Made by a program: the position numbers and the translations under genes | Origin: Leidyana gryllorum EB-2025a | Lineage: Eukaryota; Protista; Apicomplexa | Assembly: GCA_048772705.1 (NCBI GenBank) | Contig: JBLWGC010000051.1 | Span: 248,001 to 312,000, forward strand | Length of the DNA stretch: 64,000 bases | Direction: 5' to 3' | Notes under the pieces: generated by a model | Told to the model about the DNA's origin: nothing | Database searches by the model: none | What the model saw: the letters and a program-made list of their open reading frames with translations, nothing else | Part shown: positions 27,253 to 61,881 of the stretch, in pieces | How positions within the stretch are numbered: the stretch's first letter is position 1 | Layout: each line of letters starts with the position of its first letter

Positions 27253-28461
27253 TTACCGGAACCGCCGTGGTGCCTCGCTTACCATGTTGGCATACACAGT
27301 GACTCCCAAATCCATGCACTCGCGCGTCACCTCCACAGCGTATCGGGAATCGGCTTCTCCGCCGGCCTCTGGTGTTGAGGGGACCACTTGCACGAGCACT
27401 TGCTTCAGTTCGGTCGGGGACCCCAGCAGCTGGAAGTGCCACAAGCACCGTTCCGATCCGTCTCTCGACAGTATACACATTTCATTCATTCCATTTCCTT
27501 CCAAATAATGGAGTAAGGTCTTGGCCAATTCGCCAGTGCGGCCAGCCACGCGGAGGGGGAAGGGGACAGAAGCGAAGGGGAGGGGTCTTGGAGTGATGCC
27601 ATGGAAAATCTTGAGGTCGCTTTGGAGTATTTTAGTCCAAGACTCCTGGGCTACGAATGCCATCGCTTTTTCACGTGCGGCTCGTCGAGCCTCTTGTAGA
27701 CTCGATCCATCCTCGAGCTCCAGCGCCTCCAAAAGAGCTTCTGCTGCCGCTTTGTCCCGATCTTGCCATCTGTTTCCATACAAGTCGGGCGCAAAGTCAG
27801 CAGTGTCTTCCTGCAACGTCATCAGCAACAGCTTGAGACAATCTGCGTCCACAGTGACCTCGGACGCGGGCCGGACGGGCTGGAACCCGCAGCCTTTTAT
27901 CAAATGCTCAAGCCATTCCCTTTGGCCCCCGTCAGGAGGGTCGAGCCCCAACACCATTTCCGTTATCAGCGTAGTTGTGCTCCCCAATACTTTCTCCGAG
28001 GAGTTGCAGTAGATCATATGTGGGTTCTTCGCGAGCATCTCCGCTTTTGGCTGGTCTACGTGGTGATCGAACACCCCTACCACACAGCCTCGTTCCCACC
28101 AACCCTTGTTCGCTTCTGTAACATCATTGTGGTCCAGTAGGATCCATTTGCGCCCGCTGAAGGTGTGTTTCCGCCATATGTCTTTTCGGATAACGGGATC
28201 CTCTATGAAGAAGAGGAGGTCCGGGGTGATGTGTGATACGCCAATAGCTGCGGTAGTGAACTCTGAAAAGCGTTTGCGTCCAGTATTGAGAATGGGGTAA
28301 ACCTGAAGGTTATAGGGAGCCAGTTGTGCTAAGGCATATGCCAAAACGAGTGACGAAACAACCGAGTCGAGATCGGCTGACTGGTTGCCAACAAGATACA
28401 GCGTGCAAGTCCCACGTCCACCTTGTTGGATGAAACGAATGTATTCTAACAGTCCTGGCAT
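27253..28461 (-). CDS. PPX1: DHH-family exopolyphosphatase (PPX1/Prune-like)
   Basis: GNQSADLDSVVS, LLDHN, VFDHH, GSTTTLI, EDT and SDLK motifs. Confidence 0.88.
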   Translation of the reverse strand: MPGLLEYIRFIQQGGRGTCTLYLVGNQSADLDSVVSSLVLAYALAQLAPYNLQVYPILNTGRKRFSEFTTAAIGVSHITPDLLFFIEDPVIRKDIWRKHTFSGRKWILLDHNDVTEANKGWWERGCVVGVFDHHVDQPKAEMLAKNPHMIYCNSSEKVLGSTTTLITEMVLGLDPPDGGQREWLEHLIKGCGFQPVRPASEVTVDADCLKLLLMTLQEDTADFAPDLYGNRWQDRDKAAAEALLEALELEDGSSLQEARRAAREKAMAFVAQESWTKILQSDLKIFHGITPRPLPFASVPFPLRVAGRTGELAKTLLHYLEGNGMNEMCILSRDGSERCLWHFQLLGSPTELKQVLVQVVPSTPEAGGEADSRYAVEVTRECMDLGVTVYANMVSEAPRRFR

Positions 28462-28501
28462 CACCGCTCAGTCGAAAAAAGAGTGCCTTAAGGGGCAAAA
28501 G

Positions 28502-40300: not shown

Positions 40301-43300
40301 GAGGCTGCAAGAGAGACGATCAATCTTCAAGATTTTGATGAAACGGTCTTTGACACCCCAATCTTCGATCTTGGAGTGGACAGTATGACGGCCGTCACCT
40401 TCTTGCAAACATTGGGTAACAAACTGGGCCGCGAGCTCAGCAGTACTGTACTCTTTGAGTGTCCCACTTTGAGTCAGCTGGAGGAGTACCTTACCGACGA
40501 GGCCTCGGCCGCACAGTTACGCCGTGGGGTGTTGGGCAGCACTGTTCCCGGCAGTGATAATGTTTATGTCTTCGGAGCGAGTTGTCGTTTCCCGGGCACC
40601 AGTCGCGTTGTCCATTTGGAGGACGAGGTCCAACCGAACGCTCCGCATTACACGCTGACGCCTCGAGTAGAAGATTTCTGGAACATGTTGGAACACGAGG
40701 TGGACGCGATCAGAGAAGTGCCTTTGGATCGGTGGAATATCGATGCCTACTGGACGTCGTCTATGGATCAATTGGAGCCCGGGAAGATTTACGTCCGGGA
40801 AGGAGGGTTCATGGACGACGCCGATCTGTTCGACGCGCCAGCATTCCGCTTAGCTCCACGAGAAGTGGAGCAAATGGATCCGCAACAACGGCTGGCCCTA
40901 GAAAGTTGTGTCGATACATTGTGGCACGCCGGGTTTAGTGAAGCGGAAGTCAAACACCGTCGGATCGGTACCTTCTTTGGGTGCTGCAGCTCTGATTGGA
41001 GTCGCATCGCCACGTTGAACCGCACCTGTTTGGGAGGCGGGGCCACATGTCCGCCCCAAGCCAACTCGGGATCGCAGATTACTGTTTACACCTCGGCCGC
41101 TCTGGCACCGAGTCTGATTGCAAACCGCGTCAGCTTTGTTTTGGGTCTCACAGGACCTTCTGTGGTAGTGGATACTGCCTGTTCATCGTCTCTCGTTGCT
41201 CTCGATGCCGCTGTGCACCAGATGCGTGATGCCAAGTGCGAAGCGGCTCTAGTTAGTGGAGTCAATATGATACTAACCGTTGAGGTTTCTTCGATGTTAT
41301 GCAAAGCGAATATGTTAAGTCGCGATTCCCGTTGCAAGACTTGGGACGTGAGAGCGGACGGCTATGTTCGTGGTGAAGGTGTGGGGACAATTTTCATCAG
41401 CAACCATTTAGACGTGTATACTCGCTTGCTCGTGGGCTCGAGCCCGATAGCCTCTCCTCATGCCTCCCCTCCGGGCGCCCTGACCTTTCCTTCGTTGGTG
41501 ACGCTGCCGCATCGTCGCCAGGCCCCTCTTGCGGTTATCAAAGGGGTGGCAGTGAACCATGGTGGCGTTGCGGCTGCCTTGACGGCGCCCAATGTATCTG
41601 CTCACCAAGACCTGATGCTCACAGCTCTATCTCAAGCGAATGTGCCTCCCAGACTGGTCCACTTTATCGAGACGCACGGAACCGGCACCAAACTGGGAGA
41701 TCCGGTGGAGTTGGCCGCAATCCGGGCTGTTTATGGTCGCAACAGGTCATTCGAGTTACCCCTGGTAGTCGGAGCTGTCAAGACCAATATCGGTCATCTC
41801 GAGGGGGCGGCAGGTATAGCCGGTCTGATCAAAGCCATTGGCGTCATGTCGCGTCTGCTGGTGCCTCCCAATCTGCATCTCCGGGAACTGAATCCGCTGA
41901 TGCCCACTGAAGGTTTCCCAGTTGTGTTCCCCCGAGAGTGTATCAATTTGCCGGAAGCACCCGACGGGCTGCCACACTATGCCGCTGTGTCGAGTTTCGG
42001 TTTTGGAGGCACCAATGCACACGCGGTGCTTCAGCGATACGTGGAGCCCATTGTCTCGGATGCGAATGATGACATCCACGAAGAAGATATTGAGAATCGT
42101 CAGCATGACAATGTGAACCGTTGCGCTGAAGGTGACACCTCGGAAGCCACGTCAGAGTTACAGGTCGTAACCGAGACGACCGCCACGGTACCATCGACTT
42201 TACCCAAGAAGGTCGTCGAGGGAGGCTTCGAGAATGTTCCCGACTTTGCTCGCGGAAGGAAACTTTGGAAACGAACTCAATATCCTTGGCAAGAGCTTTT
42301 GTGGCCGATGATCGGTCAAGTGGATCATCAGCGCATGGAGGCGGACGGTTCAGGAGAGATAACTGTGACTACGAATGTGCGAAAGGATGTCTCTGCGCTT
42401 CTGGCAGAGCATATCATCCAGGAGGTGCCAGTTGTCCCGGGTGCTGGATTGTTTGAACAGATCAACCAGTGTTATCATGTTCAACAAATCTTGACCAGCG
42501 ATACCAGTGGATCGCCCATGGCAGCGGAATCAGAATCGGTCTCGCCCCGCAAAGTCTGTCATATCTCGACGGTCGCTATCGAACGGCCTGTTGTCTTAAT
42601 AGAACCGGTTGGTGACGCGGGCTCAGAAAGCCCTCCTCTCAAAATTGTAACTAATCTGAACCTCCCCTCTGGCCAACTTACTGTGTCAACTCAATACAAT
42701 CATCCGGCAGCTGGCCAAACCGGAGACCAACAATGTCTGACGGCGCGTTTGAACCTCAGCCGTGCCTCCTCTGTCATCTCTCCCCTAAACGCACACTTTG
42801 AGCCCAAAGCGTTCGAAGCTCCAAAGGGAGATGACTGCATATTAATGCCGAAAGAAGAATTTTATCAGCATACAACGACTGTTGGGCTGCAATTGGGCCC
42901 ACGATTCAAAACTGTACAATCTATTTGGCGCGAACCCGGCGACAATGTCGTCTTTTTGGCCGAGATCCGCCATCCCACCCGTCGCGCATGGGAAATTGAC
43001 CAATGCGAGAAGGCGTTCCTGCTGCATCCTGCCATGTTGGATGGTGTTATGCAACTGTCCGCATTGGCTCTCGCAGCTGCTGACCATTCTACCAAAGCCT
43101 TCTTTGTACCCGTGACTGCTGAGAATGTGTACCTGAGCAGTTTCTCTGTGCATGACACTTTGATCGCTAAAACAATGGTACTCAAGCGTACTGACCGCGG
43201 AGGCGATGTGCGAGCTGCAATCTATAATGCGACCACTAAACAGCTCGTCGCACGCATAGATCGCCTGAGTATGGCCACAGTCAATTTCTACCTGCCGCCT

Positions 43301-46300
43301 GAGATGCCCAAAGAACTCTTGTGGCGTCTCGAGACCGCACCAATTGACAATCCTGCCGGAAATCCTCAAGAGCACGCCACTCCGCCCACTACGCCCAAAT
43401 TGACCTCAGACAGGCCCACCATTGCTGTGTCGGCGTCTCCCAATCTGTCGGGAAGTCAGGCCCCGAGCAAAGAATGGGTGCTCGTTGCCCCAGCTCACCA
43501 ACACAATCTGCTCGAGCAGCTCGCCCAGAGTCTCCCAGAGCCCCACAACACCACAGAGGTGGACCTGAACGATAATCAGCCCTACCCAGCTGGATCCACC
43601 AACATTGTGCTTCTCTTCAAAGACATTAGCGCGGAAGCCGCGGCCCTCACAGCTCTCCTCAATGCCCAACGCATCACTGGACTTCCCAATAGAACGGTAC
43701 AATTCTGGTTACTGTGGAGTAATCGTGAGCTAGACGGTGTTATTGGTGCATTCCGACGATCGCTTGATATGGAATGGAGCCTTCTGGGTACCAATTCCAG
43801 AGTGGCGTCTCTGAGGATCGACGATCTGTCTATCCTCAGCGCCTCCCACTGGATTGATCTCGAGGCCAAACTGCTAAGTGGGGAGTCCGAGATTATTCTC
43901 AACTCACACTCCGCAACTATGATGGCCCCGCGTCTGATGCCAGTGGAATGGGGAAACCGACCTTTCGGAACTGTGCTCGAGCTCTACCGAGATGGTCCGG
44001 GCCTGAAAGTGAGAGGAGCCAATGCGGCCATCCGCCGCAACCCGCGAGCTGACGAAGCCGAGGTGTCGGTACGCTGTTTCGGCCTCAAACGTCGCAGTGG
44101 GGCCCACCAAAGGGCGGGTGATCACTCATTCGTGGAATCAGCCGATGTGTACTTTAGTGGAATAGTGGTGGGAGTGCCCAACCATCCCAAGAGTCACGAG
44201 CACGAACTTTCATACAGAGTGGGAGCTCGTGTGACAGGAACGTGGCCAGCCAACACGAGCGTCTGGAGAAGTCTACGGTGCATCCCGAAGGAGTGCATCA
44301 AGGATACCTTCCTCGACGATGTCTCATTCGAAGCAGCCATTGTGGATATGTTGGCAGGCCCACCAGAAAGGGGCGAAGTGAATAGGGTCTTCCAATGCAT
44401 CGACGCCAGCAGCAATGAAGACTTGCAGAAGAATCTTTGCATGAGTGACAACGATGACATTGTCGTCCTCAAAGTCCCCTCTGTGATCGAAGGTCTGAAC
44501 CAAAACCTCAAGATCAAGCCGAGCCATGAGGCAGTGGTAATCACAGGTGGTCTGGGAGGATTGGGTCTCCGAATCGCAGAGTGGTTAGCCTGCCAAGGGC
44601 TCAGGAATATAGTGCTATTGAGTCGACGGGGTACACTATCACCCGAGTTGGCGGCTGTTGACCAGTCGTGGATGCGACTGGTCAACCACGACAGCGAAAT
44701 CAATGTCAAGTGTGTGGCGTGTGATGTGACGGATTACGACTCTGTACACCGAGTCTTTGAACGTTTGGTGAACATTGATGGTTTCGATGTAGTTGGCATT
44801 ATCCACGCGGCCGGTATCCTGAGCGACAAACCGTTACAGCGTATGACCATCGAGGAAGATTGGGATCCAGTCAATGCTGTCAAGAACCTCGGTTTCCGCC
44901 ACGTCTCCGCAGTTGTTGACGAGTTGAAATTGAAACCGCGTTTCTTCACCGTCTTCTCATCAATTGCGGCTCTGATGGGCAATGCCAATCAAACAAATTA
45001 TGCCATGGCAAATGCGTTGATGGATACATTGGTTGAGAGGCGACGAATCAAACGACCTGAACTGCCCTGCCAGACAATCCGCTGGGGTCCTTGGAAGGAG
45101 AACGGTATGGCCGCCTCCCTCGAGTCGGCCTACACTTTGTTGGGCTATCGGGGGATCAGTAATGAGCTCGGACTCGTTGTACTCAGTGAGGCGCTCAAGC
45201 ACCCCAGCACAGACTACAATGTCATGCCACTGGACTTGGGACAGTTTGTCACTGGGAGACCACGAAGATGGGCCATGTTCGAGAACATCTACAGCCGGGC
45301 CCCCGAAGGCGGAGTCAGCAAAGGCGGCAAACGAGTTCTGCCCAAACGATTGCTGCGCCTCAATGATGCAGATCTGCACGCTCACATCCGGAAAACGGTC
45401 TTGGAGGCTGCCAAGAAGGTTATTGGGGGAGACACCATCAAAAGCATCGATGATCTGCCGACTGATGTACCTCTCACCGATGCTGGTGTTGACTCTCTGG
45501 CCGCTGTGGAGTTCCGAGACGAAGTTAGCCGACAACTGGGGATCAATCTGAGTGTGTCCACACTGTTTGATTATCCCGCCCTCGACAACCTTGTGGACTA
45601 TGTCTACCAAGAAATCAAGTCCATTGCCGGAGCTCCGGGTACGGCAGGCCCCTCCACGAGCCCCGCCATGGGCAAACCTTTGTTGGGCTTAGGCGGGAGC
45701 CGAGCAATGGAAGGATACGCGGTGGTCGGAATCGCTTGCCGAATGCCCAGATCACCTGACCCGAAGTTGTTCTGGCAAATGCTCGAAAAGAAGACAGATT
45801 GTGTGGTTGAAATGCCACTAAGTCGATTCAATCTCGACCATTTCTACTCTCCCGAAATGGACAAACCCGGTACCGCCTACACCAGAGCCGGAGCTTTCAT
45901 GGGTGGCATTGAGTGGTTCGACAATGGGTTCTTCTCCATCAGTGATGCAGAGGCAAAACTGATGGACCCCCAACAACGAATGATGCTGGAAGTCACTTAT
46001 GACGCTGTTGTGGATGCCGGATTGGATCAAAAGTCTCTCAGATCCCACTATCAGGACCTCGGAGTCTATGTGGGTTGCTGTAACTTTGATTGGCACTATA
46101 TGGATGCCAACAACAACCCCAAGAGTGGATCTCCCTTCAGTTGTACTGGTGGCAGTATGAGTCTGGTGTCCAATCGTATCAGTTACGCTTTTGGTCTTCA
46201 TGGTCCCAGTATGACCATTGACACAGCGTGCAGTAGCAGTCTGGTCGCGCTCGACGCCGGACGTGAAAAGATGGATGGGGGCGCCTGTTGCGGACTGCTC

Positions 46301-49300
46301 CTCGGAGGTGTCAATCTGATGTTGAGTCCTCAACTCTTCATTGGCTTCTGCAAAACCCGCCTTCTCAGTCCAGACTGTGCCTGCAGGACTTTTGATGCAG
46401 GAGCTAACGGATATGTCAGAGGTGAAGGAGCCGCCGCCATGTTGCTGTTGCCCGTGGGAGGCCTCAAGAGTGTTCGGGAGCAAAAGATCTACGCCATCAT
46501 CCGTGGATCTGCCACCAACCATGTTGGTCGAGGCTCCACCTTGACAGCGCCGAACGGTCCGGCACAGGCGGCTTGTATCACCGAGGCCCTCCAACGTGCC
46601 CGAAGAGAGCCTAACGATGTCTTTTACCTCGAAGCCCACGGCACCGGCACAGAGCTCGGTGACCCCATCGAGGCCGGAGCCATCAAGAAAGTGTTCTTCG
46701 GTGCCACACCTCGCCCCGCCCCTCTGGTGCTGGGAGCCATCAAGACTAACATTGGTCATCTTGAAGGCGCGGCTGGTGTGGCTGGGCTGCTGAAGACCAT
46801 TCTGGTGCTGCACAAGCGACAGATTCCTCCTAATGTTCACTTCAAAGAATTGTCACCCCACATTGACTTTACCGACTGCAATGTGAAGATCCACGCTAGC
46901 GAGGGTTGCCTCTCCTTCGATGACGATCTGGGCACTGTTCCACAGGTCGTGTGTGCTGGTGTGAGCAGTTTCGGATTCGGAGGTGCCAATGCCCACGTCG
47001 TGATTGAGAGCTTACCACTCAATCAGAACACAAAGCGGGAGACCACCACTGCCCTCCTCCTGTTCACCGGGCAAGGAAGTCACTTGGCCGCTATGGGAGC
47101 CCAATTGTACAATAAGTCGAAGATCTACAAGGAGCGGTGGGACATGTTGGAAGCGGAATTCCACAAATTTGTGGCATCTGCACTGTTCCAAGACAACGCG
47201 ACGGAAAGTGACATCCAAAACATCCCTGAGGGCTCACTGATCGAAGCGTTGGAGAATGTCGAGAAGCTCGATGCCTCTCCTGTGACTGCACAGGTGTCGG
47301 TGGTGATGCTGGAGCTGTCCTTGATGGCGTTCCTACAGTTCACATACCCCGATGTTCAGATTGCGGGAGTTGTGGGACACAGTTTGGGTGAACTATCTGC
47401 GCTGGCTGCTCTCGAGATAATGGAACCAGCCGACATAGTCAAGCTGGTCGCCCTCCGAGCAGCCTTCATCCAGAGTTGGTGCGATAAACCTCAAAATCAG
47501 TGCATGGTGGCTTGCAAGGAATCCGCGCAGGTGGCAACTGCGAAGATATCAGAGTTGAATTTGACGCACGAAGTTGCAGTGGCTGCAGTCAATGGACCGA
47601 AACGCGTAGTGATCAGTGGTATATCGTCTGCCGTTGAACGAGTGGTGACTGCCATGGGACTCAAGGAAGGACGAACAGCTAAGCGATTGAATGTCAACCG
47701 AGCATATCACAGTCCGTGCATGGCACCTTTGAAGGAGCCATGGGAGAAGGTGCTCACCCTGCGCTTCTTACCCAAATTACTACCGCGCCCCGAGTCTAAG
47801 GCTGGAATCCAGTACTTCAGTACAGTAAAGGGTGGTGTGATTGATCATTCCGAGTTACGGAAGCCTCAGTATTGGGTGGACCATTTGATGAACACTGTGC
47901 TCTTCTACGATGCCGTGAATGACGCCTTCACCAAACTCGCCCCGTCACTCGACACCATCATTGAGGTCGGGCCCAGCGGGGTGCTCACTCGCCTCATTGG
48001 CGCATTCAAACCAACTCTGAAGAGTACCTTCAGCTGCTTCACACTCGACGAGGATCCTCTCATGGAGGACATTAACTGTCAACGAACCACGACTGGACAT
48101 CAGTGGCGTCGACGTCGGCATAGATGGACTGACCACGTTTGCCATCCAATGCTCGGGAACGGACAGAATCTGTACGATGGCAGTGTTCAGTTCCGCACAT
48201 GGCTCAGGAACGATGCGGCAGCACTGTTCCGAGATCATAAGGTCGTCAATAGGGCCATCATGCCTGCTACGGGAATGATGGATATGGTGACTGTCCAAAT
48301 CGCTCAGCTCAACACAAAGAAGTGGCAGACAGCTGTCAGCGTCATTGAGAGAATGGACTTTATTCGTCCCTGTCTCATCCCTCCCGAGGCCACGGACCGC
48401 TCGAGCAAGTTCAAGTGCGAATCGCAGCTCTGTGTCACTTATCAAGCAGATGGATCTTTCAAAATCGTTCAGAACTATCCTCGTGCTGATGAAGATGAGG
48501 ATGGACCTGTGGTGGTGTGTACGGGCCGAGTGTCTCTGCGAACAGGTTTGACGGAGAGGAGTCCGATGTCGAGTCCCACTTCCCCCAAGACCGATGTCCT
48601 GGACACCGGAGACGGTTTGGCCCAGATCAAACAACGTATCGCTCGCCATGCATTGTTGAGCTCTTCTACGATGCGCGATATTGGTTTCACTGATCTCACG
48701 GAAAACATTACCCCCGAACTGCTGGAGGAGGTGGCTGCCTCGGACGAAAAGGCATTGGCTGTTTTCGACACCATCGCTGAGCGATCGTCTGAGCACATTC
48801 CGTTCATCTATGAGAGGTTCGCAAACAAAGGCATCCAATATGGCGCGCGTTTCCGGACAATGCGTCAGTTGGTATGCAGCGACACAGAGGTTTGTGCCCT
48901 CCTCAAAGTCACGCTCCCCGAAGATCCCTGCCTGGCCGGCCCAGAAGAGGTGTTATCCCATGATGAAGCTGATTACTTTGTGGATCAATGCTTCCGTTGG
49001 CATCCTGCAGTGTTGGATGGTGTGCTTCAGGCGTCGGCACCATTGGTTCGAACGGTGGAAGGTGTCTATCTGCCGAGTGTTATGAAACATGCGTACTTCC
49101 GCGGCTTATCGTGGGACGTCACTGAGCGCGGTCTGTGGGGACACGCGCAGATGATCACCAAAGACGAGAACACCATCTGCATGTCACTGGCGTTTTACAG
49201 CGCAGTGACATACGAGCGAGTCGGAGTCATCTCTGACTTGCGGTTCCGGAAACTGAATCTGCAGTCCACTTTCACCGTGCCGACCTCTATGTTCTGGACC

Positions 49301-52300
49301 ACCACCTGGACCGCGGCGCCGGAAAGTCTGACGGAGAGCGATGGGCCATCTGCTGCAAAGGAGATCGAGAACCAACCGGCCGACAATAAGGCCACAGTAG
49401 ACAGTGATCCTCAGAACATGTTGCTGTTGGGCCGGTCTCGTGACTTGGAACTGAACGACTTGGGCGACAATGTCGCGGAGGTGCCGAGTGATGACTCCTG
49501 GACGGAGTGCTTGAACGATGGCAATAGCAAAATCATTGCATCCCTCCACCTCCTTACCAATCGGAAGATGAATGAGCTGTCTCGAGTATATCAAGGGCTG
49601 TATGACATGTTGCAGAAGCTGCAACTGGCTGTCAGTGCCAGCTCGACCGCAAAACAGTACCTCGTGATAGTGGGCACGCAGAGATCGGGACTGACGTCTT
49701 TCATCCGGGCAACTTGTCTCGAGATTATAGCCACCGGACTCGGACGCAAACTGGAGGTCGTCGGTGTCGAAGTGCACGGTGACTACAACTCCACTTCCAT
49801 CACAAAACTGCTTGCCAGCCTCTCGCACCATGTTGTCAAGAGGAGTGTCAGTGAACGTGAAACGCTCTTGAGATACAATGCGGAGGAGAGCACGTGGAGT
49901 GTAAGCAGACTCATCAAGTCGGCTAACTTTGAGTGTTACGGCCCCATGGAGATGTTCCTGCCCAAGCGTGGCACTATCAGTAATCTGCGCATTCGGCCGA
50001 TGAGCAGCGAGGGACGGATGCTGCCGGGCCCTGGCGAAGTTGAAATCCTCGTCCTCGCTGTTGGTCTCAATTTCCGTGATGTACTGAACGTTATGGGACT
50101 CTATCCGGGCGATCCTGGCCCCCCAACTGCGGATTTGGCAGGTGTTGTTCTGAGAGTTGGGCAAGGGGTCACTCGTTGTCGGTTGGGTGACAGAGTGTAT
50201 GGTCTGGCTACCAATGGCGCCTTGAAAACTTATATCACCACTCCAGAGAGTCTGGTGGGCGTCTTACCCGACACTCTGGAAGCTCCATGGACTTTCGAAG
50301 CGGCATCTGCCCTCCCGGTGGCTCAGATCACTGTGGAGTATGCCTTCACTGATTTGGCGCGTCTCGACGGGCCAAACAATATCATCGATGACAAGTCCGC
50401 TTTGCCCATGTCAACCGAGGCCAAACGTATACCCGAGCCGTACCACTCCAGCCCCAACATCCTCATCCATGCTGCGACTGGAGGCGTAGGTCTGTTTGCG
50501 GTCCAATACTGCAAGCGTATTGGAGCCACCGTTTATGCAACTGCAGGAGCAGACTTCAAACAAGATTACCTCCGCAAGGCCTGCGGTTTGGAGTATGTGA
50601 CCAGCAGCCGCAATCCGACACAATTCAAAGAGGACATGTCGCGTTGGCTCGGTGCTGACAAAAAGCTGGACGTTGTACTCAACTGTTTGGCCGGAGATTT
50701 CATTGATACAAGTTTGGCGCTTCTCAAACCCGGAGGTACTTTTATCGAGCTGGGCAAACTGAGTATAAAGACTGTGGCTCAAGTTGCGGAAATCCGCCCA
50801 GATGTTATCTACACGCCAGTTGCTGTCGATGTGATGGTGGCTCGTGACCCAAGGTGGTTCGCAGCGCAACTCGATAGGACTGCTCGCTTGTGTTCCGAAG
50901 GAAAAATCGTCCCGATCCCGGTCACAAACTTCCACATACTCAACAGTCACGATGCCTTCCGCTTCTTACAAAAGGCGGGACATATCGGCAAGGTGGTGAT
51001 CGCCCTCCCAGTATTGTCAGAGTGGCTAAGCAGTCAGTCGCCTGATGAGAAGGCCTCGGAAGAGATCACTCAGAGCGGGCTGAACGCTGCCTCAGGATCC
51101 AACAATGGTGGCCGCTCTCTTAACGAATACGACAGACCTATCATCATCACTGGTGGATTGGGCGGCTTGGGGTGCGTGATCACTGAGTGGCTCATATGCC
51201 ATCTGGGGATGCGAAACATCATCGTGATGAGCCGGAACGCAAAGATACCAGAACCCCCTGCGACAGAGGATATTGAGCCAACTTTGGCGTGGCAGACTTG
51301 GGAAAAAGTCCAAGCGTATCCTCAAGCCACCTTGCAACTCATCAAATGCGATGTTAGCGACCGACAACAAGTACTCGATGCTTTCGGCCAACTGAACATC
51401 AGAAATCGGGGTGTACAGGGGATAATACACGCTGCCGGTGTCCTGAGAGACCTGCCCATCAAAAGTATGACGCCCGAGTCAGTAGATGCAGTATTTAAAC
51501 CCAAGATTGATGGTACATTGAATCTCTGCGAGGCTCTGCGGACGAACGATCTTGAACCATCCTTGAGTTTCTTCGTCGCTTTCAGCTCTGCAACAGCAAT
51601 GCTCGGCAACATCAACCAGACGAACTACGCGGCTGCAAATGCAATCATGGATCACATAATGCTCGAGCGGCAAGCTGCAGGACTGAAAGGCCAATCGATC
51701 CGCTGGGGTCCGTGGACCGAACAAGGAATGGCTAAAAATCTCGAGTCCTTCTTGGGTACTCTCGGTATCAGAGGTATCACCAATGACATTGGACTGCGAG
51801 TTCTGGGCGACGCCATTCGCCAGCAGAGTACTGTGCCCGTATTGGGTGTGGAAGGTCTGCGATGGAGAGCTTACTTGACACAATATGATGAGAAAGTTCC
51901 TGCTTTCTTCAGTGAAGTCGCATCCGATGCTGCTGGAGGTGCAGCGAGAGATCGTCTCGATAAGAACTTACTCAATATGGACGCTGAAACACTGAGAGCT
52001 CATGTTCTACAGATCGTTGTCAGCACTGCGGTCGAAGTGTCCGGTCGCCGGGCTGAAGATGGGATCGATCTGGATCAGCCACTGACGGAATCCGGTATCG
52101 ATTCCTTAGCAGCGGTGGAGTTTGGAAATGAACTCTCTAACAAACTGGGGGTCAAGTTGAGTCCGACCACGCTTTTCGACTACCCGACCCTCAATGGCAT
52201 CGCTCAACACGTGTACGAACGCATTGCCAGCAGCATCGGAGTTGCGGCAGGTGAGGGTGGAGCGGAAGCGGGAGTCTTGGGCGGCGCTCTAATTGATGGT

Positions 52301-55300
52301 GAAGAAGGCCTCGTCTTGGGTCCCGACCTGTCACCTCTGGCAGATAGACCCATCAGTCGGGTGCCCCCGGGCGCTATGATGGTACGATCGCCTAATCTCG
52401 CTATTGTCGGGGCAGCGTGCAGGATGCCAGTTCACAGCTGGTCTCTGGATGCCTACTGGGATATGATGGTGTCGAAGAAGGACTGCATAAGATTCATTCC
52501 CGAGAGTCGCTTTGACATAAGTCGCATCTTTGACGCTGACCCGAAGATGAGCAATCGATGCTATGTGCGGGAAGCCGGCTTCATGGATGGCGTGGACTTG
52601 TTCGACCACCGCTTCTTCAACATCACACCGGCAGAAGTGAATGTAATGGATCCACAGCAAAGAATCTTCCTCGAAGTTGCCTACGAGTCGCTTTTGGACG
52701 CTCGGCTCAACCGCAAAGCTGTGCAAAACAAGAACATTGCAGTCTATCTGGGTTGCTGTAACTTCGATTGGCACTGCACCGAAGCCACTGCCCGATGTGA
52801 CAGCACTTTCAGCAGCACTGGCATCGCGGCCAGTATTATTGCCAATCGTGTGTCATACGTCCTTGGTTTGGTGGGGCCCAGTATGGTGATCGATACAGCC
52901 TGTAGCAGTTCATTGGTCGCGCTGGATGCTGCAATGAACAAGATGAGTATCGATGACAGCATTGAAGGTGCCATCATTGGTGGTGTCAATGTCATCGCTG
53001 CTCCTCACGCATTTGTCGCATTCTGCAAGACCCGAATGCTGGCTCCTGATGGCAGGTGTAAGACCTTCGATGCAGCTGCAAATGGCTACGGACGAGGAGA
53101 GGGTTGTGGGTCCATTTATGTGGTTCCAAGCCGGAGTCCAATGGCAGCGACTTCGAGAATTCATGCCACCATCCGAGGATCTGCTGTGAATCATGATGGA
53201 ACAAGTGCCAGTCTCACTGCTCCCAACGGTCGGGCCCAACGAGCCGCACTGGCTTCGGCCTTGGTGCGGTCTGGCGTAGCAGCGAGTGATGTGGTGTACC
53301 TTGAGGCTCATGGTACCGGTACAGCCCTTGGCGACCCGATTGAGGCTGGAGCCATTAGAGGTATCTACTTGGACGGTATCCGTGCTGAAGGAGGCGACGG
53401 CATGCCCTTGGTGCTCGGAGCTGTCAAGACCAACATTGGTCATCTGGAGGGAGCCGCGGGTATTGCTGGATTGTTAAAGACCATGTTGGTCTTGAAGCAT
53501 AAGCAAGCACCACCTCTTGTACACTACAAGAGCTTGAATCCACACATCAAGTTCGATGGAGTTAAAGTCGTCATCCCGACAGAGGTGGTTGACCTTGAAG
53601 TTGTGAGCGGCCGGTTGAATCGCACGAAGCCACGTCTATGTGGAGCTGTCAGTAGTTTCGGCTTTGGCGGCGCGAACGCCCATGTTATCATTGAGGAAGT
53701 TGTGGGCCGACAAGCTTCGTGGCCCCAAGAGAGTGCGGACAAGACATCAGAAGCAAACGTCGTTTTCCTCTTCACTGGCCAGGGCTCTCAGTATGTGAAT
53801 ATGGCTCGTGATCTGTATGACGGTGATGCTGAGTTCAAGTCTACCGTGGATCACCTGCTATCGTTATTCGGACCTCTGGGAGAGGAAGCACGGAAGGCCT
53901 GGTTCAAGTCCGATCAGGATGCTGAGACGTCGGTGGAGGAGATAAACCGAACAAATGTTGCCCAAGTCTGTCTCTTCGTCCTACATGTCAGTCTATTCCG
54001 ACTCTTACAATCCAAAGGAGTCACCCCCTCTTTCGTGTTAGGTCACTCTCTCGGCGAGTACGGAGCCGCAGTGGCGGCTGGAGTAATGACAGCGGAGGAT
54101 GCAGCTCATCTGGTCCTAACTCGGTGCCAAGCGATGCATCACACTGTGTCTGACGACCCCGTTATGGTGGCCTTGCGAGTGTCCGAACAGACAGCGCTAT
54201 CTCAGATTCAGGCATTGGGTCTCGATGTGGCGGTTGCGTCTGTCAACGCTCCACAGAACATCACTGTCAGCGGAGAACGAGGTCAGGTTGTCCAACTCTT
54301 GGATGCGTTGAAAGTGGGAGATAACTGTCGCTACTTGAGTGTAACGCAAGCATTCCACAGCTCCTCCATGATACCCGCCAGCGAGAAGCTGCGTGCAGCA
54401 ATGACTGGTGTTGTCCTACGTGAATACTCGCCTACTCAGAGTGCGCCCAAGTTCATCAGTACTGTAACTGGCAATATCGGGCCGGAGGCTCATGAGAGTG
54501 ATTACTGGCCGAACCAAATCATTCAACCAGTCCGGTTCCACGAAGCGATGCGAACGGCGTTGGTACGCGGCGGCTCTCTGTTTATCGAGATTGGCCCCAA
54601 GCCAACTCTCATTAATCTGGGTCGACTGGCGCTCCAGTCCGAAGAGAATACCGGGTGTCAATGGGTCCCATGTCTGATGCCTCAGACTGATGCCCAGAAG
54701 ACTGTCGCCGCGGTTTGTTCCGTTGTGAAGGGTCAAGAGGCACACTCCTGGAACCACGTCAGCATTCCCTGGCAGCCGTGTATGGTGGCTGACGATGGAA
54801 GTTACCTCGCCCCCAACATGGCCATCAGCAAGTCCGAACCGCAGACCGAGCAACCTGGAGATCGGTCCGAGGCAGAAGAGATGGTCACCAATGCCATTAA
54901 GGACGTCGCTCGCCGGGTGTTCACTGATGTCTCCATAGAGGATCTGGAGACCCCCCTCTTTGAGCTGCTGGCTGGTGTGGACAGTCTTGCCACTGTTGAG
55001 TTCCGCGAACAGCTCAATGACAAGCTCAACTTGGAAGTCCCAGTTACTGTTCTGTTCGACCACTCGAATTTCCGAGAGGTCCGCGACTACGTGGTGGACA
55101 TGGTGCTCGAGACGTCCGGCAGAGTCAGTCGCAAGGGTCTGGGTGTGGAACTGCATGGACCAGTCAGCGCAAGTCAATCAGTTGGTATCGTTGGAATTGG
55201 TCTGGCGTTCCCGCACCGCGCCCGCAGTCTAAAGGAGTTCTGGCAACCAATCATTAATGGCGAGGCTCTCTTTGTGGACATACCATTGGCGAGATACAAC

Positions 55301-58300
55301 ACAATGTTGAGTTACGAGAGCGATCCAAGCTCGTTGACCACAACCACCAACTACAGCCGCTCCGCAGCTCTCCTGGACCTCGACATACTGACGGATATGA
55401 AAACCTCATACTTCCATCTGTCCAACCGAGAAATGGAGCTGGCCGACCCACAGCATCGCCTGGCTATCACCGTTGGATACGAAGCCCTGCTGAGTGCTGG
55501 GATGACCCTGAAGACTATACAAGGCCACGAGATCGGTGTCTTTGTTGGCAGCTCAGATCACGAATGGCCCCTCATCCTCGGAGGTATTCAGGGTGAAAAG
55601 GTCCCAGAAGCGACTTCCAACGCGAGCGCATTGTCGTCTGCCCATCACTACACAGGGGCAGCCTCATGTATGTTGGCTAACCGGGTCAGTCACACTTTGA
55701 GACTGCGAGGGCCGAGTATGTCAGTTGACACCGGGTGCAGCAGTTTCGTGTCGGCTCTCAGTATGGCTTGTGACTCTATCAACCTGAACAGAGCACATCA
55801 AGGAGCTCTCGCGATTGGTGTCTCGGCGATATTGGGACCCTTGGCAACCACTGGGTTGTGTCAAATGCGCTATCTCTCCACAAATCGTGATCATATCAAC
55901 CCTTTCGATGTGAGGTCAAATGGCACTCTGCGCGGCGAAGGCTGTGGAGCTGTTATGCTGATGCCCTATGCGGCTTGCACCACCTCCGACAAGTACAAAG
56001 TCTTCGGTTGGATCAAAGGCATAGGGGTCAATCAGAATGGAGGAGGTACCCATCTTACTGCTTTCCACACTCCGGCTGTTGAAGGTGTCATGCGGAAGGC
56101 GCTCAGAATGGCCACCACCAGTCCCTCGGATGTCGATGTCGTGGAAGCCCAAGCGAACGGTATCGTCATTGGCGATACTGTCGAGATGAATGCTATCCGC
56201 AATGTCTTTGCACCCGACGCCGGCTCAGAAACCCTTCGCCCTTTGTACGTGGGCTGTGTACACTCACACTTCGGCCACAGTAACGGGGCTATGGGAGCGG
56301 CACAACTCATCAAAGCTTTAATGACGATCCATCATCGCGTCGTGCCTGCGCTCCTCGGATTCAAGCAACCTCATCGCTTCCTGGGAGACGTCAAGAAATA
56401 CTCTGTCATTCTGCCGACTGAGAACACACCACTTCGCAGCGATGGTCATCCCATTACTGTTCTTATGAACTCCTTTGGAATGGGCGGCGCAAATGGAAGT
56501 GTTATCATCAGTGGGGTGAGCGATAGCAGAGTTCGCGAAGAAGACCTCAAGTACCCGAGCACCGACGAGGCGTTCCTTCAATGTCCCTCTGCTCATCTGC
56601 CTTGGTCTCCTCCTGACGCCCTCGTTGCTGCCAGTGCCTTGAGCAATGACCTCGCCCATCCCACTGCGGATCTTGACGAGCTGCTCAGCATCGTGGCTAA
56701 GGCACCCAACCGGGTCAACTTCCTCAGCTCTTGGCACCGGATGGTCGACAGCACTCCAGAACTGAGAGACTACAATATCCTCATTGTAGCTGGAGGACCA
56801 GTCTCAGACCTCATGAAACAGCTGGTTGACCGATTGTTTGAGAGGCGCGAGTACAGTCGTATCACCGTGATCTGCCAGAGGAAATACTACACACCCTTCG
56901 AGAGCGACTGGCCGTTCCCCATACGCAGTGCTGACGAGGAGTTCTCCCGTTTACAATGGGTTGCAGTCGAGCCAAGTGTGGATACAAACTTGCCTGTCAC
57001 CCCTGATGCTTTCGACTCTGTGTTTGTTATCCCACGAAGTCAACTGTTGGGAGTTCCCTACGCCCTGTGTCGAGATGATGTTCAAATGGTCAAGTTGTGT
57101 CTGCCGCTCCTCTTGGAATCTCGCGAAATTCAAGTCCTTAGTCATGCTTACAGCGATCCTCAACTGCTTTTCTTGACAGAAGGGAAGCTCAATTGCGTAC
57201 CCCGACCTCTAACTGTGGAAGAGGTCAGCCGCATGGCTTCCCCTCAGCTGCACGGAGGCGTCTGGGCCCGTTTAATCATCGAGAGGATCCTCACAGAGCT
57301 GAAAGGCGGCCGTCGTATAACGATCCATCGCCACGGCCTTATCATGAACAATGAGTTGTTGTCCAACGTCATGATGGCTATGCTCGAGACTGCTGTCCGA
57401 GCAGGACAAGTAGTAGATGGCGCTCCTCTGCTGGTGTCGAACGTTCAGTCCCTCATCGAAGGTCTGTGTGACTACAATAGCGAGTACTGGAAGGCGACCA
57501 ACTTTGAAGGGGTTCTGTACACTAACTTGGTGTCTCGCACACCTTACACGCGACAACATTTGGTTTTGGATCTGACCCTGTTGGGATTGAACGTTGATGT
57601 GGTGCCGCTTGAAGCGGTCTTGCGGGAGGCCAAGAACGCCAACAGCAACTCGGGAACTCTTGTTTCGATGACCATTCATCGCATGCTGGCTCCGCATCTC
57701 ACGTCGCCGCAGACTACTCCTGTAACGTTCGGTGGATACTGTCCAACGTCTGTGGAGGCCGTGTCCGCGGTCCACCTGCGTATGCCTACAGTGACGCTGA
57801 AGCGGGGCTTCCCCTTCCGCACCCCAGTTGATGCAACGATAAGTGCGGAGAAGATCCTGGGGGCTTTGTACACGGCTGGAGCATTACCGCGTAATCGCCC
57901 GCTCAGCGCAGTGACACTGGCTGTACTCAAGGCTTTCAGCCATGCGGCCAGTGCTGCCAATCTCAGCAGCCACGGTATCGCCATGTTGAGGTTGATGCTC
58001 TGTCACTGTGTCCAGAACCTGGAAGTATGTGCCGCATTAGAAGAGGCAGGCGTACAGCCGGCGTATAACCAAGGATCGTCTACCACTGACGCTCTGCAAC
58101 CCGTTTTCGTAATTGGAATGGACCGCCTGTCGAATCTGTTGGTAGCCAATATGTTGTTGGCAGACAAGGAGCGGTTCCGGTCTCCTGGGTTTGGTCGAAT
58201 GATGGCCCTGTTTGGTCCCATAGGCCATCTCAAATGGGATGAGGATGAGCCAATTTGGCCAGCAATCACTCGAGCTTGGCAGAACTTTGACAAGGCGCAG

Positions 58301-61300
58301 GCCTATGTCGAAGATTCCATCCAGACACTGAAGAACATTGTTGGCACCGACTATGAGTGCTTGTTCCCTGACAAGGAGGAACAGCCATGGGAAGACACTC
58401 TGCTTCTGGAGTTCATGGGGTTGAACCAAAGTTATATGATGAAGTTCCAGATCGATGTGACGCAAGTCATGAAAGACCATATGCTGGAAGCCTACAAACT
58501 GCACAGAATGATGCTCGGACTGCAGCTACATCGCATGAAATTCAAGTGTCGGCCACTTGATGGACAGCATGTGGTTCTCACCTCGCCATACCACTTACTC
58601 GGCCTGAAAGAGCTCATGACCACCTATCCAGATTGCCGGATAGTCTACATCACTAGCTCCATAGAGTCCGCCTTGCACTTGAACATTCAAGTTTCTGAGC
58701 GATTCCAGTACAATCTGCGTCGGACCTACGACTTGGGAGAGATTGTGAGAAGCCAACGAAAAGTATTGCGAGAAGGCATCGGGGCTGCCCTCCCACAACT
58801 GAGACAACTGAGTGACAAACAGCTCTTCGTGGTGCGGCCGGAAAGCATTTTCGAGAACAGTCGTTCCTTGTTATCCTCATTGCGTGCCTGGTTGAACATT
58901 CCGAGAACTGAGCCTCTGCCAACGAGCTGTACCCGGGCGTTGTCGGAAGTGGTATTGGACCAGCTGCTCCCCCACTCGATGGATCATCGCAGTCGTGGAC
59001 GAGTCGCCCTGATCAGTCAAGCTATGCAACACATGAGTGAGGCTAGTGAGGAGCAATTGGCAGAGACGCCTTTGACCTTCGAAGCCCCGCGCGGCACTGA
59101 TGAGTACTTTGCGTGCCTTCAGGTCGCTGCTTCGAAGAAACTGACCAGCGCGACTCTCCGAAAGGCACTTCAACACCTCAGCGTCCCTGTGGCCGCACCT
59201 GGGGACGACCCAACGGAAGTCATCCGCCATTACATCACTAATCTGATCCCGACTTTGTTCCAGATTGAGGTGATCGAAGGGACCAAACCCAGATCGCGGA
59301 TAATACTGACTGGCGCTGTTGGCTTTTTGGGAAGATACGTTCTGCACTCACTCCTTCAGAAAGACTTGGACAGCTACACAGGACACAAGAATACCAAAGT
59401 GACATGTTTGATCCGAAATAACCAGAAGATGACAGCACGCGAGCGGTTGTTCGCGGCCTTCAATGAGGCTGGGCTACCGACCGACGAGCTCAGGACCCCT
59501 CGGGTGGAAGTGATTGTCGCAGATCTGGAGAGAGACCGATTCGGGTTGTCGAACGCGATGTATACAGAGCTCGCTGAGACCACCTACTGCATCTATCACA
59601 CAGCTGGAAAAGTGCATCCTCTGGCAGATTTCAAGGATCTCGCAGGACCCAATGTTCACGCAACATTCCAAGTTGCCAAGTTGCTGGTGTACTCTGGCTG
59701 TGAACGGATGAACTTTGTCTCGTCGGTGATTGTGTACCCCGAGGCTACTCAGGGAGCTCCACATCTCGACTTCTTCCCGGAGAGTCAGCAACCCACACCA
59801 TTCACCCAACTCGCAGATTTCCCGTAAGTGATGCTAAGTTTTGCTATATATAGACAATGAATCATGATGGTTGCAGAGTTGCGGGCAATGGTTACGCATG
59901 GGCAAAGCAGGCTGCCGAACTGATGATGCAAGTTCTCAGCGAGAGAATGGATCTTCCCATCGCCATCTATCGCTTCCCCCACGTGTTTGCAGCTGCCAAT
60001 CCTCCTCGTTTGAATGCTGATGATCCCATCACCGACATTGTCCAGGTGGCAATCGAAACTGGGCTTCTGACTGAGCGTATCATTTCCTGGACCAATGGCG
60101 TTACAGTGGATGATGGCGCACGATTGATGGTGGAGGTGAGTTTGGTGTACAGAATTGACTGTTATTGATCCCTTTTGCAGATCTCTATGAAGACGGCGGC
60201 CCACAGCGCTCACAACTCCGACGCCCCTAACACCAATACATATCACATCTGTCGCGGCAGCCACCCGAGTTCTTTCTCGAACGCGGAGGAAACGCTGGAT
60301 CTCGCTCGCACAGTTGGCATACCGATTGACGTGGTGGAGGATGACGTCTTTGTCAAACGGGCGACTGAAATGAACCCTGGCAGTAAAGCTATGGTGTTCT
60401 ATAGTTTCGCTCGCGACATGATGGACATCCGGGGTCCTCAGGTGCGCAAACGGCGGGCGCTGACGGAGAGTGAAACACTCTGCAACACGAGAGCCCTAAA
60501 TGCGCATACTACATGGACTCCCAGCTCCGAGCTGTTCGCCGGTTTGATACGTCAAGTTCTGATGACTCGGCAATTGAGTATGAATTCGGCCATCTCGTCA
60601 TTGGACGGGCACAAAATCATTCAACTTTGTCACCACGCTGTCCGCAATGTATTGGGTGCCGATGTGTGGAGAGAATTGGAGGAGACATTCCAGGATCGAT
60701 CTAAGCGAACTCTTTTGGATGATGAGAACTTCTTGATGGAGCCCCTTGAGATCTTCCGGAGCGAAGCCTCTCAAAAAGCCAATGCTTTGGGTCGCATCTT
60801 TGCGCGAAGATTCGTACAGCAATGGTATTGCAACTTGATGCTTATGCAACTGGCGGAGAAACGGGATCCGTCGCTGCTCACCCTACCCATCGTGGAGAAA
60901 CCCGTTTTCATCGTTGGACTGAACCGAAGTGGAACTACGTACTTGTACCATGCATTAGCCCGCGATACGTCAGTGTTCAGAGCTCCCACCCTAATGGAAC
61001 TGATGATGCCCTACGGTACTGATGGGGTCTTCTTGCCGCAACCGGGCGAGACCAGTCCCGCTCCGTTACTGCCGTGTGATCTGGAGTCATACGCAGAGGA
61101 CCCACGGCGCGAAGTCTGCCAGATGCATCTCAAGTGGGCGAGCGTCCCTAACTGGGATGTAATCCACCAGTCCCACGCGCAGCTCCCAGAGGAGGATTAC
61201 CTGATCTTCGATCATTCCGGACGAACGTTCTCCTTCCCGATCGCATATGACGCAGCAGAGTATACGAGATGGTTGGAGGCGAACGACTACGCGGAGTTGA

Positions 61301-61881
61301 GAAGGGGATACAAAACGCACATAAGATTCCTCAGACACCTCCAACGCCAGAGAGAAACTCCCCGATGGCTGATCAAGGGACCCTTCCATATGATCACAAT
61401 GGACACTCTCTTCGAGACGTACCCAGATGCCAAAATCATCTGTCTGCATCGGAGTCCGGTGGCATCAGTGGAGTCGTGGCTCAATTTGGTTCTGGCGTTC
61501 CGGAAAACTCTGTCGGACAGCGAGGACCACACTTTGTGGGCCCACGAGGAAGTGCAGCGCGAAGCGTTGATGATGGAGAGGTTCCAGAAATGGCGCGACG
61601 CGAATCCCGAGTTGGCGAGTGAAAGAGTCCTTGACGTCCACTTCAACCGGATGATAAAGAGTCCGGGCGATACCGTCAAAGAAGTTTATGACTTCGTGGG
61701 AGAAAAGTACGACGACACGGTGGCCAGCCTGCTGGAGGGATTTGAATGCGAGGATGGAAACTGGCGTCTTCAGAAAGGCACTTTGAATCGAAAAGAGCCT
61801 CTGTTATACTTTGGCTTAACAGAAGAGGAAGTGAATAAGGCTTTCGCAAAGTGCCGCTTGCACAGCTCCTCCACCAACTAG
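37376..61881 (+). CDS. Giant modular type I polyketide/fatty acid synthase (~8,107 aa); exons 37376-37638, 37681-37977, 38020-59823, 59877-60135, 60181-61881
   Basis: Four canonical GT-AG introns join the ORFs in frame (24,324 nt in total) and restore GDRVVL-CYQPGLEF and DFP-VAGNGYAWAKQAAE; FAAL, ACP, KS, AT, DH, ER, KR, reductase and sulfotransferase motifs as listed in the domain entries. Confidence 0.95.
37790..39830 (+). other. PKS domain: fatty acyl-AMP ligase (FAAL) loading domain
   Basis: FLQYTSGSTGQPKGV, SWLPVYHDMGLIG, GPNFAF, AYGLAENTL, FAAL-specific insertion before LVSCG, KDMLIIRGRNYYPQDIE, LPKTSSGKVRR. Confidence 0.92.
40280..40500 (+). other. PKS domain: loading ACP (ACP1)
   Basis: PIFDLGVDSMTAV, LFECPTLSQL. 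Confidence 0.9.
40560..45620 (+). other. PKS module 1: KS-DH-vestigial ER-KR-ACP2, with no AT
   Basis: KS DTACSSS/HGTGT/GHLEGAAG; DH AEHIIQEVPVVPGAG and HPAMLDGVMQ; KR TGGLGGLG, HAAGILSD, NQTNYAMAN; ACP GVDSLAA. Confidence 0.88.
45715..52230 (+). other. PKS module 2: KS-AT-DH-ER-KR-ACP3 (fully reducing)
   Basis: KS triad intact; AT FTGQG/GHSLG/AYHS; DH RDHKVVNRAIMPATG and HPAVLDGVLQ; ER GLNFRDVL and LIHAATGGVG; KR HAAGVLRD and NYAAAN; ACP GIDSLAA. Confidence 0.92.
52395..55110 (+). other. PKS module 3: KS-AT-ACP4 (non-reducing)
   Basis: KS triad intact; AT FTGQGSQY/GHSLGEY/AFHS; ACP AGVDSLAT. Confidence 0.92.
55180..56520 (+). other. PKS domain: non-elongating ketosynthase (KS0)
   Basis: DTGCSS keeps the Cys, but EAHGTGT is replaced by EAQANG and KTNIGH by HSHFGH. 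Confidence 0.8.
56770..58900 (+). other. PKS domains: degenerate reductase followed by degenerate sulfotransferase
   Basis: GGVWARLIIERIL...ITIHRHGLI parallels GYAWAKQAAELMM...IAIYRFPHV; QPVFVIGMDRLSNL...RFRSP...LTSPYHL...TYPDCRIV parallels KPVFIVGLNRSGTT...VFRAP...IKGPFHM...TYPDAKII. Confidence 0.7.
59290..60560 (+). other. PKS domain: thioester reductase (R, NAD_binding_4/SDR), split by two introns
   Basis: IILTGAVGFLG, VTCLIR, ADLERDRFGL, IYHTAG, PNVHAT, FVSS and YxxxK (GYAWAK). Confidence 0.9.
60600..61860 (+). other. PKS domain: C-terminal PAPS-dependent sulfotransferase (Sulfotransfer_3, mycobacterial Stf-like)
   Basis: PVFIVGLNRSGTTYL (5'-PSB), PEED, WLIKGPFH, YPDAKIICLHRSPVASVESW (3'-PB, RxxxxxxxS). 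Confidence 0.88.

What the first reader, a model, noticed from the sequence alone, without database searches (positions are those of the whole stretch)
59290..61881. Reductase-then-sulfotransferase chain-termination unit
Seen: an intact R domain (TGAVGFLG, GYAWAK) is directly followed by a terminal sulfotransferase with intact PAPS motifs (GLNRSGTT; HRSPVASVES), and there is no thioesterase. Known: the characterised PKS sulfotransferases (CurM, olefin synthase Ols) act before a TE, sulfonating a beta-hydroxyl to drive terminal-olefin formation. Inference: this ST most likely sulfonates the alcohol made by R, which is a different release logic. Its helical N-terminal extension (GRIFARRFVQQWYCNL...DPSLLTLPIVEKPVF) resembles mycobacterial Stf-type sulfotransferases, hinting at recruitment of a bacterial domain.
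Basis: partly seen in the sequence, partly recalled or inferred. Interest (0 to 1): 0.85.

Follow-up and report, generated by a model that had tools for sequence, protein, structure and literature searches.

The report
Gregarine polyketide synthase with reductase-sulfotransferase tail
A giant lipid-building enzyme of a gregarine-like parasite ends in a reductase plus a sulfotransferase that probably release the chain as a fatty-alcohol sulfate; that ending was described in 2013 but is still untested, and the new detail is a catalytically dead second copy of the unit just upstream, kept in two other gregarines.

Summary
A ~8,030-aa apicomplexan (gregarine-like) type I PKS ends in a thioester reductase, split by two short introns, then a sulfotransferase, with no thioesterase. 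The ST has the mycobacterial STF9/STF1 fold (Z 37.6/36.4; CurM 12.8). The unit is not new: Della Sala 2013 (PMC3908369) described it in sponge-symbiont SwfB and coccidian FAS and proposed the same primary-sulfate product. I find it in gregarines, Rhytidocystis, Cardiosporidium, chromerids, 80 of 80 bacterial loci examined and twice more in this genome, so it is old, not freshly recruited. I found no biochemical test. New support: the genome keeps PAPS synthase and a sulfate transporter, shows no sulfite or PAPS reductase, and its only detectable sulfotransferases follow reductases. The last module has no KR, so there is no CurM-type beta-hydroxyl. The finding missed a full, catalytically dead R-ST copy between the terminal KS and the live unit (HHalign 99.6%), conserved in Blabericola and Gregarina sp. 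Poly1. Other scan notes on this genome flagged the same features. Verdict: new variant of a known, untested system.

The parts
37649..61881 (+). Type I modular PKS/FAS gene, about 8,030 aa. Inferred exons 37649-37977, 38020-59823, 59877-60135, 60181-61881. Domains: AL-ACP-KS-DH-KR-ACP-KS-AT-DH-ER-KR-ACP-KS-AT-ACP-KS-deadR-deadST-linker-R-ST
   Evidence: collinear with Blabericola migrator P0010, 7930 aa. The start codon is the first in-frame ATG and is inferred
54926..55093 (+). ACP4, last carrier domain (GVDSL), in a module with KS and AT but no KR, DH or ER; likely substrate donor for R
55178..56545 (+). Terminal KS4 without its own AT or ACP; catalytic Cys kept, first His changed to Gln (EAQANG) here but kept in the two orthologs
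56770..57840 (+). Degenerate reductase copy: Gly-rich NAD(P)H loop and YxxxK lost (HGGVWAR in place of GY.W.K)
   Evidence: (HHalign 99.6%, 667 columns)
57842..58950 (+). Degenerate sulfotransferase copy: 5'-PSB GMDRLSNL, KxP changed to TSP, 3'-PB changed to ITSSIESA
   Evidence: (PF13469 E 1e-4, below cut-off)
58961..59290 (+). About 110-aa helical linker, 25% identical in orthologs; no match to ACP or to the FAS-type ACP-R linker
59297..60570 (+). Intact thioester reductase (R) over three exons: TGAVGFLG, FVSS (Ser at the Thr/Ser triad position), GYAWAK
59824..59876 (+). Intron, 53 nt, GTAAGT..CAG
60136..60180 (+). Intron, 45 nt, GTGAGT..CAG
60586..61881 (+). Intact STF1/STF9-type sulfotransferase with helical N-terminal extension; 5'-PSB GLNRSGTT, PEEDY, KGPFH, 3'-PB HRSPVASVES

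Best explanation
A cytosolic lipid assembly line. Inferred from domain order: AL loads a fatty acid; module 1 (KS-DH-KR, no AT of its own) adds an enoyl unit; module 2 adds a fully reduced unit; module 3 (KS-AT only) leaves a beta-keto acyl chain on ACP4. The intact R domain reduces that thioester with NAD(P)H through the aldehyde to a primary alcohol (shown for the related TgPKS2 reductase, inferred here). The fused STF-type sulfotransferase then transfers sulfonate from PAPS to that alcohol, giving a long-chain alkyl sulfate (inferred; not shown for any R-ST unit that I could find). KS4 and the dead R-ST copy are non-catalytic or transfer-only parts, kept as a scaffold, dimer interface or lipid-binding spacer. 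Shown: sequence, motifs, fold, distribution, PAPS supply genes. Inferred: all chemistry.
For: R and ST motifs intact and matching the family consensus. ST model pLDDT 88 matches STF9/STF1 at Z 37.6/36.4, rmsd 2.9 A over 370/357 residues, against CurM Z 12.8 and Ols Z 12.5. No TE, and no KR in the last module. TgPKS2 reductase makes octanol from octanoyl-CoA and acts on acyl-ACP4 (10.1101/2023.05.23.541938); CpFAS1-R reduces C20-C26 acyl-CoA (PMC2995488). The genome keeps ATP-sulfurylase/APS-kinase (C2:117259-118448) and a SulP transporter, has no sulfite reductase hit, and its one weak PAPS_reduct hit carries an FAD-synthetase-like motif. All Sulfotransfer_1/3 hits follow an R domain. In 80 bacterial loci 79 keep all three motifs, 75 lie in or beside a PKS, and 12 have an APS-kinase/PAPS-synthase homolog within 8 kb. 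Mtb Stf3 is proposed to sulfonate a hydroxylated long lipid (PMC6469627); that Stf3 is in this subfamily is from memory, not tested.
Against: No enzyme assay or product exists; E. coli expression of the swf cluster gave no new metabolite. Two- versus four-electron reduction cannot be read from sequence. A third gene in this genome pairs a dead R with a live ST (C202), and chromerid FASs pair a live R with a degenerate ST, so the two activities are not always coupled. The Sulfotransfer_2 search had no positive control, and short exons can hide genes. The roles of KS4 and the dead copy are untested.
Confidence: 0.58

Rival explanations
1. R releases the chain, but the ST sulfonates another acceptor: a secondary hydroxyl of the product (for example after reduction of the 3-keto group) or a separate lipid.
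For: Dead-R plus live-ST gene at C202, with an ortholog in Gregarina sp. Poly1; most STF-like relatives are stand-alone proteins.
Against: R-ST contiguity is kept from bacteria to alveolates with both active sites intact in most copies, which fits a direct hand-over.
Confidence: 0.15
2. The sulfate is an activating group, not the end product. Module 3 leaves a 3-keto group, so a C1 sulfate is beta to a ketone and could eliminate to a vinyl ketone or be displaced, for example in cross-linking a cyst wall.
For: Last module lacks KR, DH and ER; sulfonation as a leaving group is known from CurM. The chemistry is my inference.
Against: The FAS paralog (C2) and the bacterial swf systems end in reducing modules and use the same R-ST, so a stable alkyl sulfate is the family default.
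Confidence: 0.1
3. R stops at the aldehyde, which other enzymes turn into an amine or acid; the ST then makes a sulfamate or acts elsewhere.
For: Many R domains are two-electron; an aldehyde dehydrogenase gene lies just upstream on the same strand (35462-36931).
Against: That gene scores best as succinate-semialdehyde dehydrogenase; the tested apicomplexan R goes on to the alcohol; no aminotransferase domain in the PKS.
Confidence: 0.08
4. The terminal ST is inactive and the product is a plain fatty alcohol, as in coccidian PKS2.
For: Neospora and Besnoitia PKS2 models end in R with no ST; degenerate STs occur in chromerids.
Against: PAPS motifs intact; the ST (44-53% identity to orthologs) is better conserved than R (37-44%) or the dead copy (25-32%); PAPS synthase is retained with no other detectable use.
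Confidence: 0.06
5. CurM/Ols logic: the ST sulfonates an ACP-bound beta-hydroxyl before release.
For: Distant homology to Ols and CurM ST (phmmer E 0.006 to Ols; Z 12.5-12.8).
Against: No TE, the ST lies after R, no KR in the last module, and the fold is much closer to STF1/STF9.
Confidence: 0.03

Closest known systems
SwfB of sponge symbionts (swf cluster; Della Sala 2013, PMC3908369)
   Same: Contiguous thioester-reductase plus sulfotransferase downstream of a type I PKS/FAS; same motifs; same proposed primary alkyl-sulfate product; untested in that paper
   Different: SwfB is a stand-alone ~835-aa protein beside a mono-modular PKS; here the unit is fused to a multimodular PKS, spliced, and preceded by KS and a dead R-ST copy
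Apicomplexan/chromerid type I FAS/PKS1 (CpFAS1, TgPKS1 type; Zhu 2010 PMC2995488; Bushkin 2013 PMC3760245)
   Same: AL-loaded multimodular enzyme with a terminal reductase region; an ST is drawn at the end in Bushkin Fig. 2; the C2 paralog in this genome and many alveolate proteins end ACP-R-ST
   Different: Those have reducing modules and ACP before R; this one has a non-reducing last module, a terminal KS and the duplicated unit. Cryptosporidium and Toxoplasma sequences were not retrieved here, so they were not compared directly
Toxoplasma TgPKS2 KS-TR release (Keeler 2023, 10.1101/2023.05.23.541938)
   Same: ACP4-KS before a reductase; four-electron reduction to the alcohol shown there
   Different: TgPKS2-type proteins (Neospora, Besnoitia models) end at R, with Asn-Tyr-Lys; here Ser-Tyr-Lys, an ST follows, and the terminal KSs do not group in the quick tree
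Mycobacterial STF1 (2ZQ5) and STF9 (2Z6V)
   Same: Whole fold including the helical N-terminal extension (Z 36-38); 5'-PSB and 3'-PB motifs
   Different: Stand-alone enzymes, 20-23% identical; not part of an assembly line
CurM and Ols ST-TE
   Same: PKS-embedded PAPS-dependent sulfotransferase
   Different: Different ST subfamily (Z about 12.5), acts before a TE on an ACP-bound beta-OH; no TE and no final KR here

Membership tests
SwfB / coccidian-FAS R-ST didomain | N-terminal thioester reductase contiguous with a C-terminal sulfotransferase | tested here: met
   (exon by exon; the ortholog is one transcript-derived protein)
SwfB / coccidian-FAS R-ST didomain | Lies at the end of, or beside, a type I PKS/FAS | tested here: met
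SwfB / coccidian-FAS R-ST didomain | ST groups with other R-fused STs rather than with stand-alone STs | tested here: met
   34-row set with alveolate and SwfB-like STs, SH-aLRT 97; quick, unrooted tree; one unassigned stand-alone protein inside
SwfB / coccidian-FAS R-ST didomain | Makes a primary alkyl sulfate (proposed only) | not testable with these tools
   PMC3908369 proposes it and detected no product
Thioester reductase (PF07993 / TIGR01746) | GxxGxxG loop and Ser/Thr-Tyr-Lys triad | tested here: met
   TGAVGFLG, FVSS, GYAWAK
Thioester reductase (PF07993 / TIGR01746) | Score above the curated cut-off | tested here: inconclusive
   PF07993 passed in both exon pieces; TIGR01746 121 bits for the first exon piece and 159.5 for the ortholog against a cut-off of 213
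STF1/STF9-type sulfotransferase | Helical N-terminal extension plus ST core in one fold | tested here: met
   Z 37.6/36.4, model residues 15-446 aligned
STF1/STF9-type sulfotransferase | 5'-PSB and 3'-PB PAPS-binding motifs | tested here: met
CurM/Ols ST-TE termination | ST followed by a thioesterase | tested here: not met
CurM/Ols ST-TE termination | KR in the last module supplying a beta-hydroxyacyl-ACP | tested here: not met
   KS-AT-ACP only
TgPKS2-type KS-TR release | Terminal KS directly before the reductase | tested here: inconclusive
   KS4 precedes a dead R; the live R is about 900 aa further on
TgPKS2-type KS-TR release | Asn/Glu-Tyr-Lys triad | tested here: not met
   Ser here; Asn in Neospora and Besnoitia
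TgPKS2-type KS-TR release | Terminal KS orthologous to the coccidian terminal KS | tested here: inconclusive
   Not grouped in the quick tree; both are long branches; no AU test run

The most novel reading that the evidence does not exclude
The gregarine enzyme uses a pseudo-dimeric release machine: KS4 and the dead R-ST copy pair with and feed the live R-ST, which makes a C1 sulfate on a 3-keto chain. The sulfate then works as a built-in leaving group to give a reactive enone for cyst-wall lipid cross-linking. This would be a termination chemistry distinct from CurM and from the alkyl-sulfate proposal for SwfB.
Probability: 0.1. Interest if true: 0.75.

Novelty: new variant of a known kind. 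Interest (0 to 1): 0.42.

Why it matters
[quoted passage not shown] If R-ST makes alkyl sulfates, it gives a concrete candidate (sulfated long-chain lipids, perhaps in cyst or oocyst walls) for a family that spans gregarines, other apicomplexans, chromerids and sponge bacteria. It would also be a PKS release step useful for making anionic surfactants. This genome makes a good test case because PAPS has no other visible use in it. The dead tandem copy is a conserved pseudoenzyme that I did not find described. The core idea is 2013 literature, which caps the surprise.

Tried and rejected
No sequencing run was listed. The homolog search with the dead-copy region found only NRPS R domains. No Cryptosporidium, Toxoplasma or Eimeria sequence came back, so their R-ST status rests on papers. 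The linker at 58961-59290 is not an ACP or a FAS-type linker (HHalign 0.07% and 0.15%) and has no useful Atlas hit. The Atlas gave only weak Rossmann-like (TrkA-N/RCK) leads for the dead R. The upstream aldehyde dehydrogenase was set aside as a partner because it scores best as SSADH. 'Recent bacterial recruitment' was rejected on distribution; the direction of transfer was not tested (no root). Orthology to TgPKS2 was not supported. Paper searches for PAPS synthase in Apicomplexa and for later swf work returned nothing; the Stf3 primary paper was not held. The fold of the dead copy used an alignment with intact R-STs and so is not independent; one search is the independent test.

Full report
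Setting. The window is eukaryotic and apicomplexan: it holds an inner-membrane-complex gene, short GT-AG introns, and comes from a 15.5-Mb assembly. The nearest proteins are from the gregarines Blabericola migrator and Gregarina sp. Poly1. The finding is the 3' end of one type I PKS gene. A 7251-codon frame (38072-59827) is joined to a probable first exon from 37649 and to two later exons, for about 8,030 aa. Pfam gives AL-ACP-KS-DH-KR-ACP-KS-AT-DH-ER-KR-ACP-KS-AT-ACP-KS followed by the release region.

Observation. Every motif named is present. The reductase is split by introns at 59824-59876 and 60136-60180; both keep the frame. The pieces line up end to end with the transcript-derived Blabericola protein of 7930 aa. 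NAD_binding_4 and Sulfotransfer_3 pass their cut-offs and no thioesterase is found. No reads were available.

The sulfotransferase. By sequence the best PDB matches are mycobacterial STF1 and STF9 (E 4e-16 and 9e-15) against E 0.006 for the Ols ST. A confident model (pLDDT 88, pTM 0.90) matches STF9 and STF1 at Z 37.6 and 36.4 over 370 and 357 residues, including the helical extension; CurM and Ols score Z 12.8 and 12.5. The PAPS motifs and the family's conserved Glu, Lys-x-Pro and His-Arg positions are intact.

What the finding missed. The ~870 aa between KS4 and the reductase is a second, complete R-ST. A profile of this region from three gregarines aligns to a profile of 22 intact R-ST units at 99.6% probability over 667 columns. 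It has lost the Gly-rich loop, the catalytic Tyr and Lys, and both PAPS motifs in all three species. It is still 25-32% identical between species, against 37-44% for the well-aligned parts of the live R and 44-53% for the live ST. The architecture KS-deadR-deadST-R-ST is shared by Blabericola and Gregarina sp. Poly1. KS4 keeps its Cys but has lost one His in this genome only.

Distribution. Terminal R-ST is the usual ending of alveolate type I FAS/PKS in my hit set: Gregarina, Selenidium, Rhytidocystis, Cardiosporidium, Digyalum, Chromera and Vitrella. This genome has two more: a 9878-codon FAS ending ACP-R-ST, and a separate gene with a dead R and a live ST. In bacterial genomes 197 stretches matched, and the 80 fetched are MAGs, many from sponge-symbiont lineages. 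All 80 encode R-ST, 72 sit beside a separate PKS, 3 are fused to one, and 12 have a PAPS-synthesis homolog within 8 kb. In a quick unrooted tree the window ST groups with its two orthologs (100) inside a set of alveolate and SwfB-like STs (97) apart from nearly all stand-alone STs. The unit is therefore old and was not recruited at this locus; the direction of any transfer was not tested.

Literature. Della Sala et al. [quoted passage not shown] Bushkin et al. 2013 (PMC3760245) draw an ST on coccidian PKSs. Zhu et al. 2010 (PMC2995488) assayed the 780-aa CpFAS1 reductase region on C20-C26 acyl-CoA and called its C-terminal half motif-free. Keeler et al. 2023 (10.1101/2023.05.23.541938) showed four-electron reduction by TgPKS2 TR and state that no apicomplexan PKS product is known. 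I found no assay of an R-ST unit and no description of the dead duplicate; the library lacks most subscription journals.

Mechanism. Most likely (0.58): R reduces the ACP4 thioester to the alcohol and the ST makes the C1 sulfate. Genome context supports a live ST. PAPS synthase and a SulP transporter are present. Sulfite reductase was not found, and the single weak PAPS-reductase hit looks like FAD synthetase by its motif. The only sulfotransferases found are the R-linked ones (one search lacked a control). CurM logic is unlikely because there is no TE and no KR in the last module. Because that module leaves a 3-keto group, the sulfate could also act as a leaving group (0.1, my inference). The other rivals are a different acceptor (0.15), aldehyde release (0.08) and an inactive ST (0.06).

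Verdict. What is added here is the conserved dead duplicate, the breadth of the family and the PAPS-supply argument. Earlier scan notes on this genome raised the same points; I tested them separately and do not count them as support. New variant of a known kind; interest 0.42.

Noticed in passing
G000:C2 about 46900-76560 (L005-L008): Second megasynthase, an intronless 9878-codon frame with four KS domains, ending ACP-R-ST with all motifs intact; a simpler construct for the assay.
   Followed up: partly
G000:C2:117259-118448 (L014-L016): Fused ATP-sulfurylase/APS-kinase gene about 41 kb from the end of the C2 synthase, on the same contig.
   Followed up: partly
G000:C202 about 215060-218300, minus strand (L009): Separate spliced gene with a reductase lacking the catalytic Tyr and Lys and an intact sulfotransferase; ortholog P0149 in Gregarina sp. 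Poly1.
   Followed up: partly
P0145, P0282, P0155: Chromera, Vitrella and one unassigned FAS keep an intact R but have degenerate PAPS loops in the ST: the reverse of the C202 case.
   Followed up: partly
G000:C33, C230, C224: Several further NAD_binding_4 reductase domains away from any KS; earlier notes call them A-T-R enzymes, which I did not check.
   Followed up: no
window 35462-36931 +: Aldehyde dehydrogenase, best match succinate-semialdehyde dehydrogenase, about 700 bp upstream of the PKS on the same strand.
   Followed up: partly
window about 40600-45700 +: Module 1 has KS-DH-KR but no AT and only a remnant where an ER would be; the Blabericola ortholog also lacks the AT, so its ACP must be loaded in trans or self-acylate.
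   Followed up: partly
window 27253-28464 -: DHH-family phosphoesterase, weak match to Mn-dependent pyrophosphatase; probably unrelated.
   Followed up: no
window 21176-22852 -: Inner membrane complex protein (IMCp), the marker for an apicomplexan origin.
   Followed up: no
L012 / L018: Saprospiraceae MAG with a single 3179-aa KS-AT-DH-ER-KR-R-ST protein beside a PPTase: a compact bacterial model of the same release unit.
   Followed up: partly
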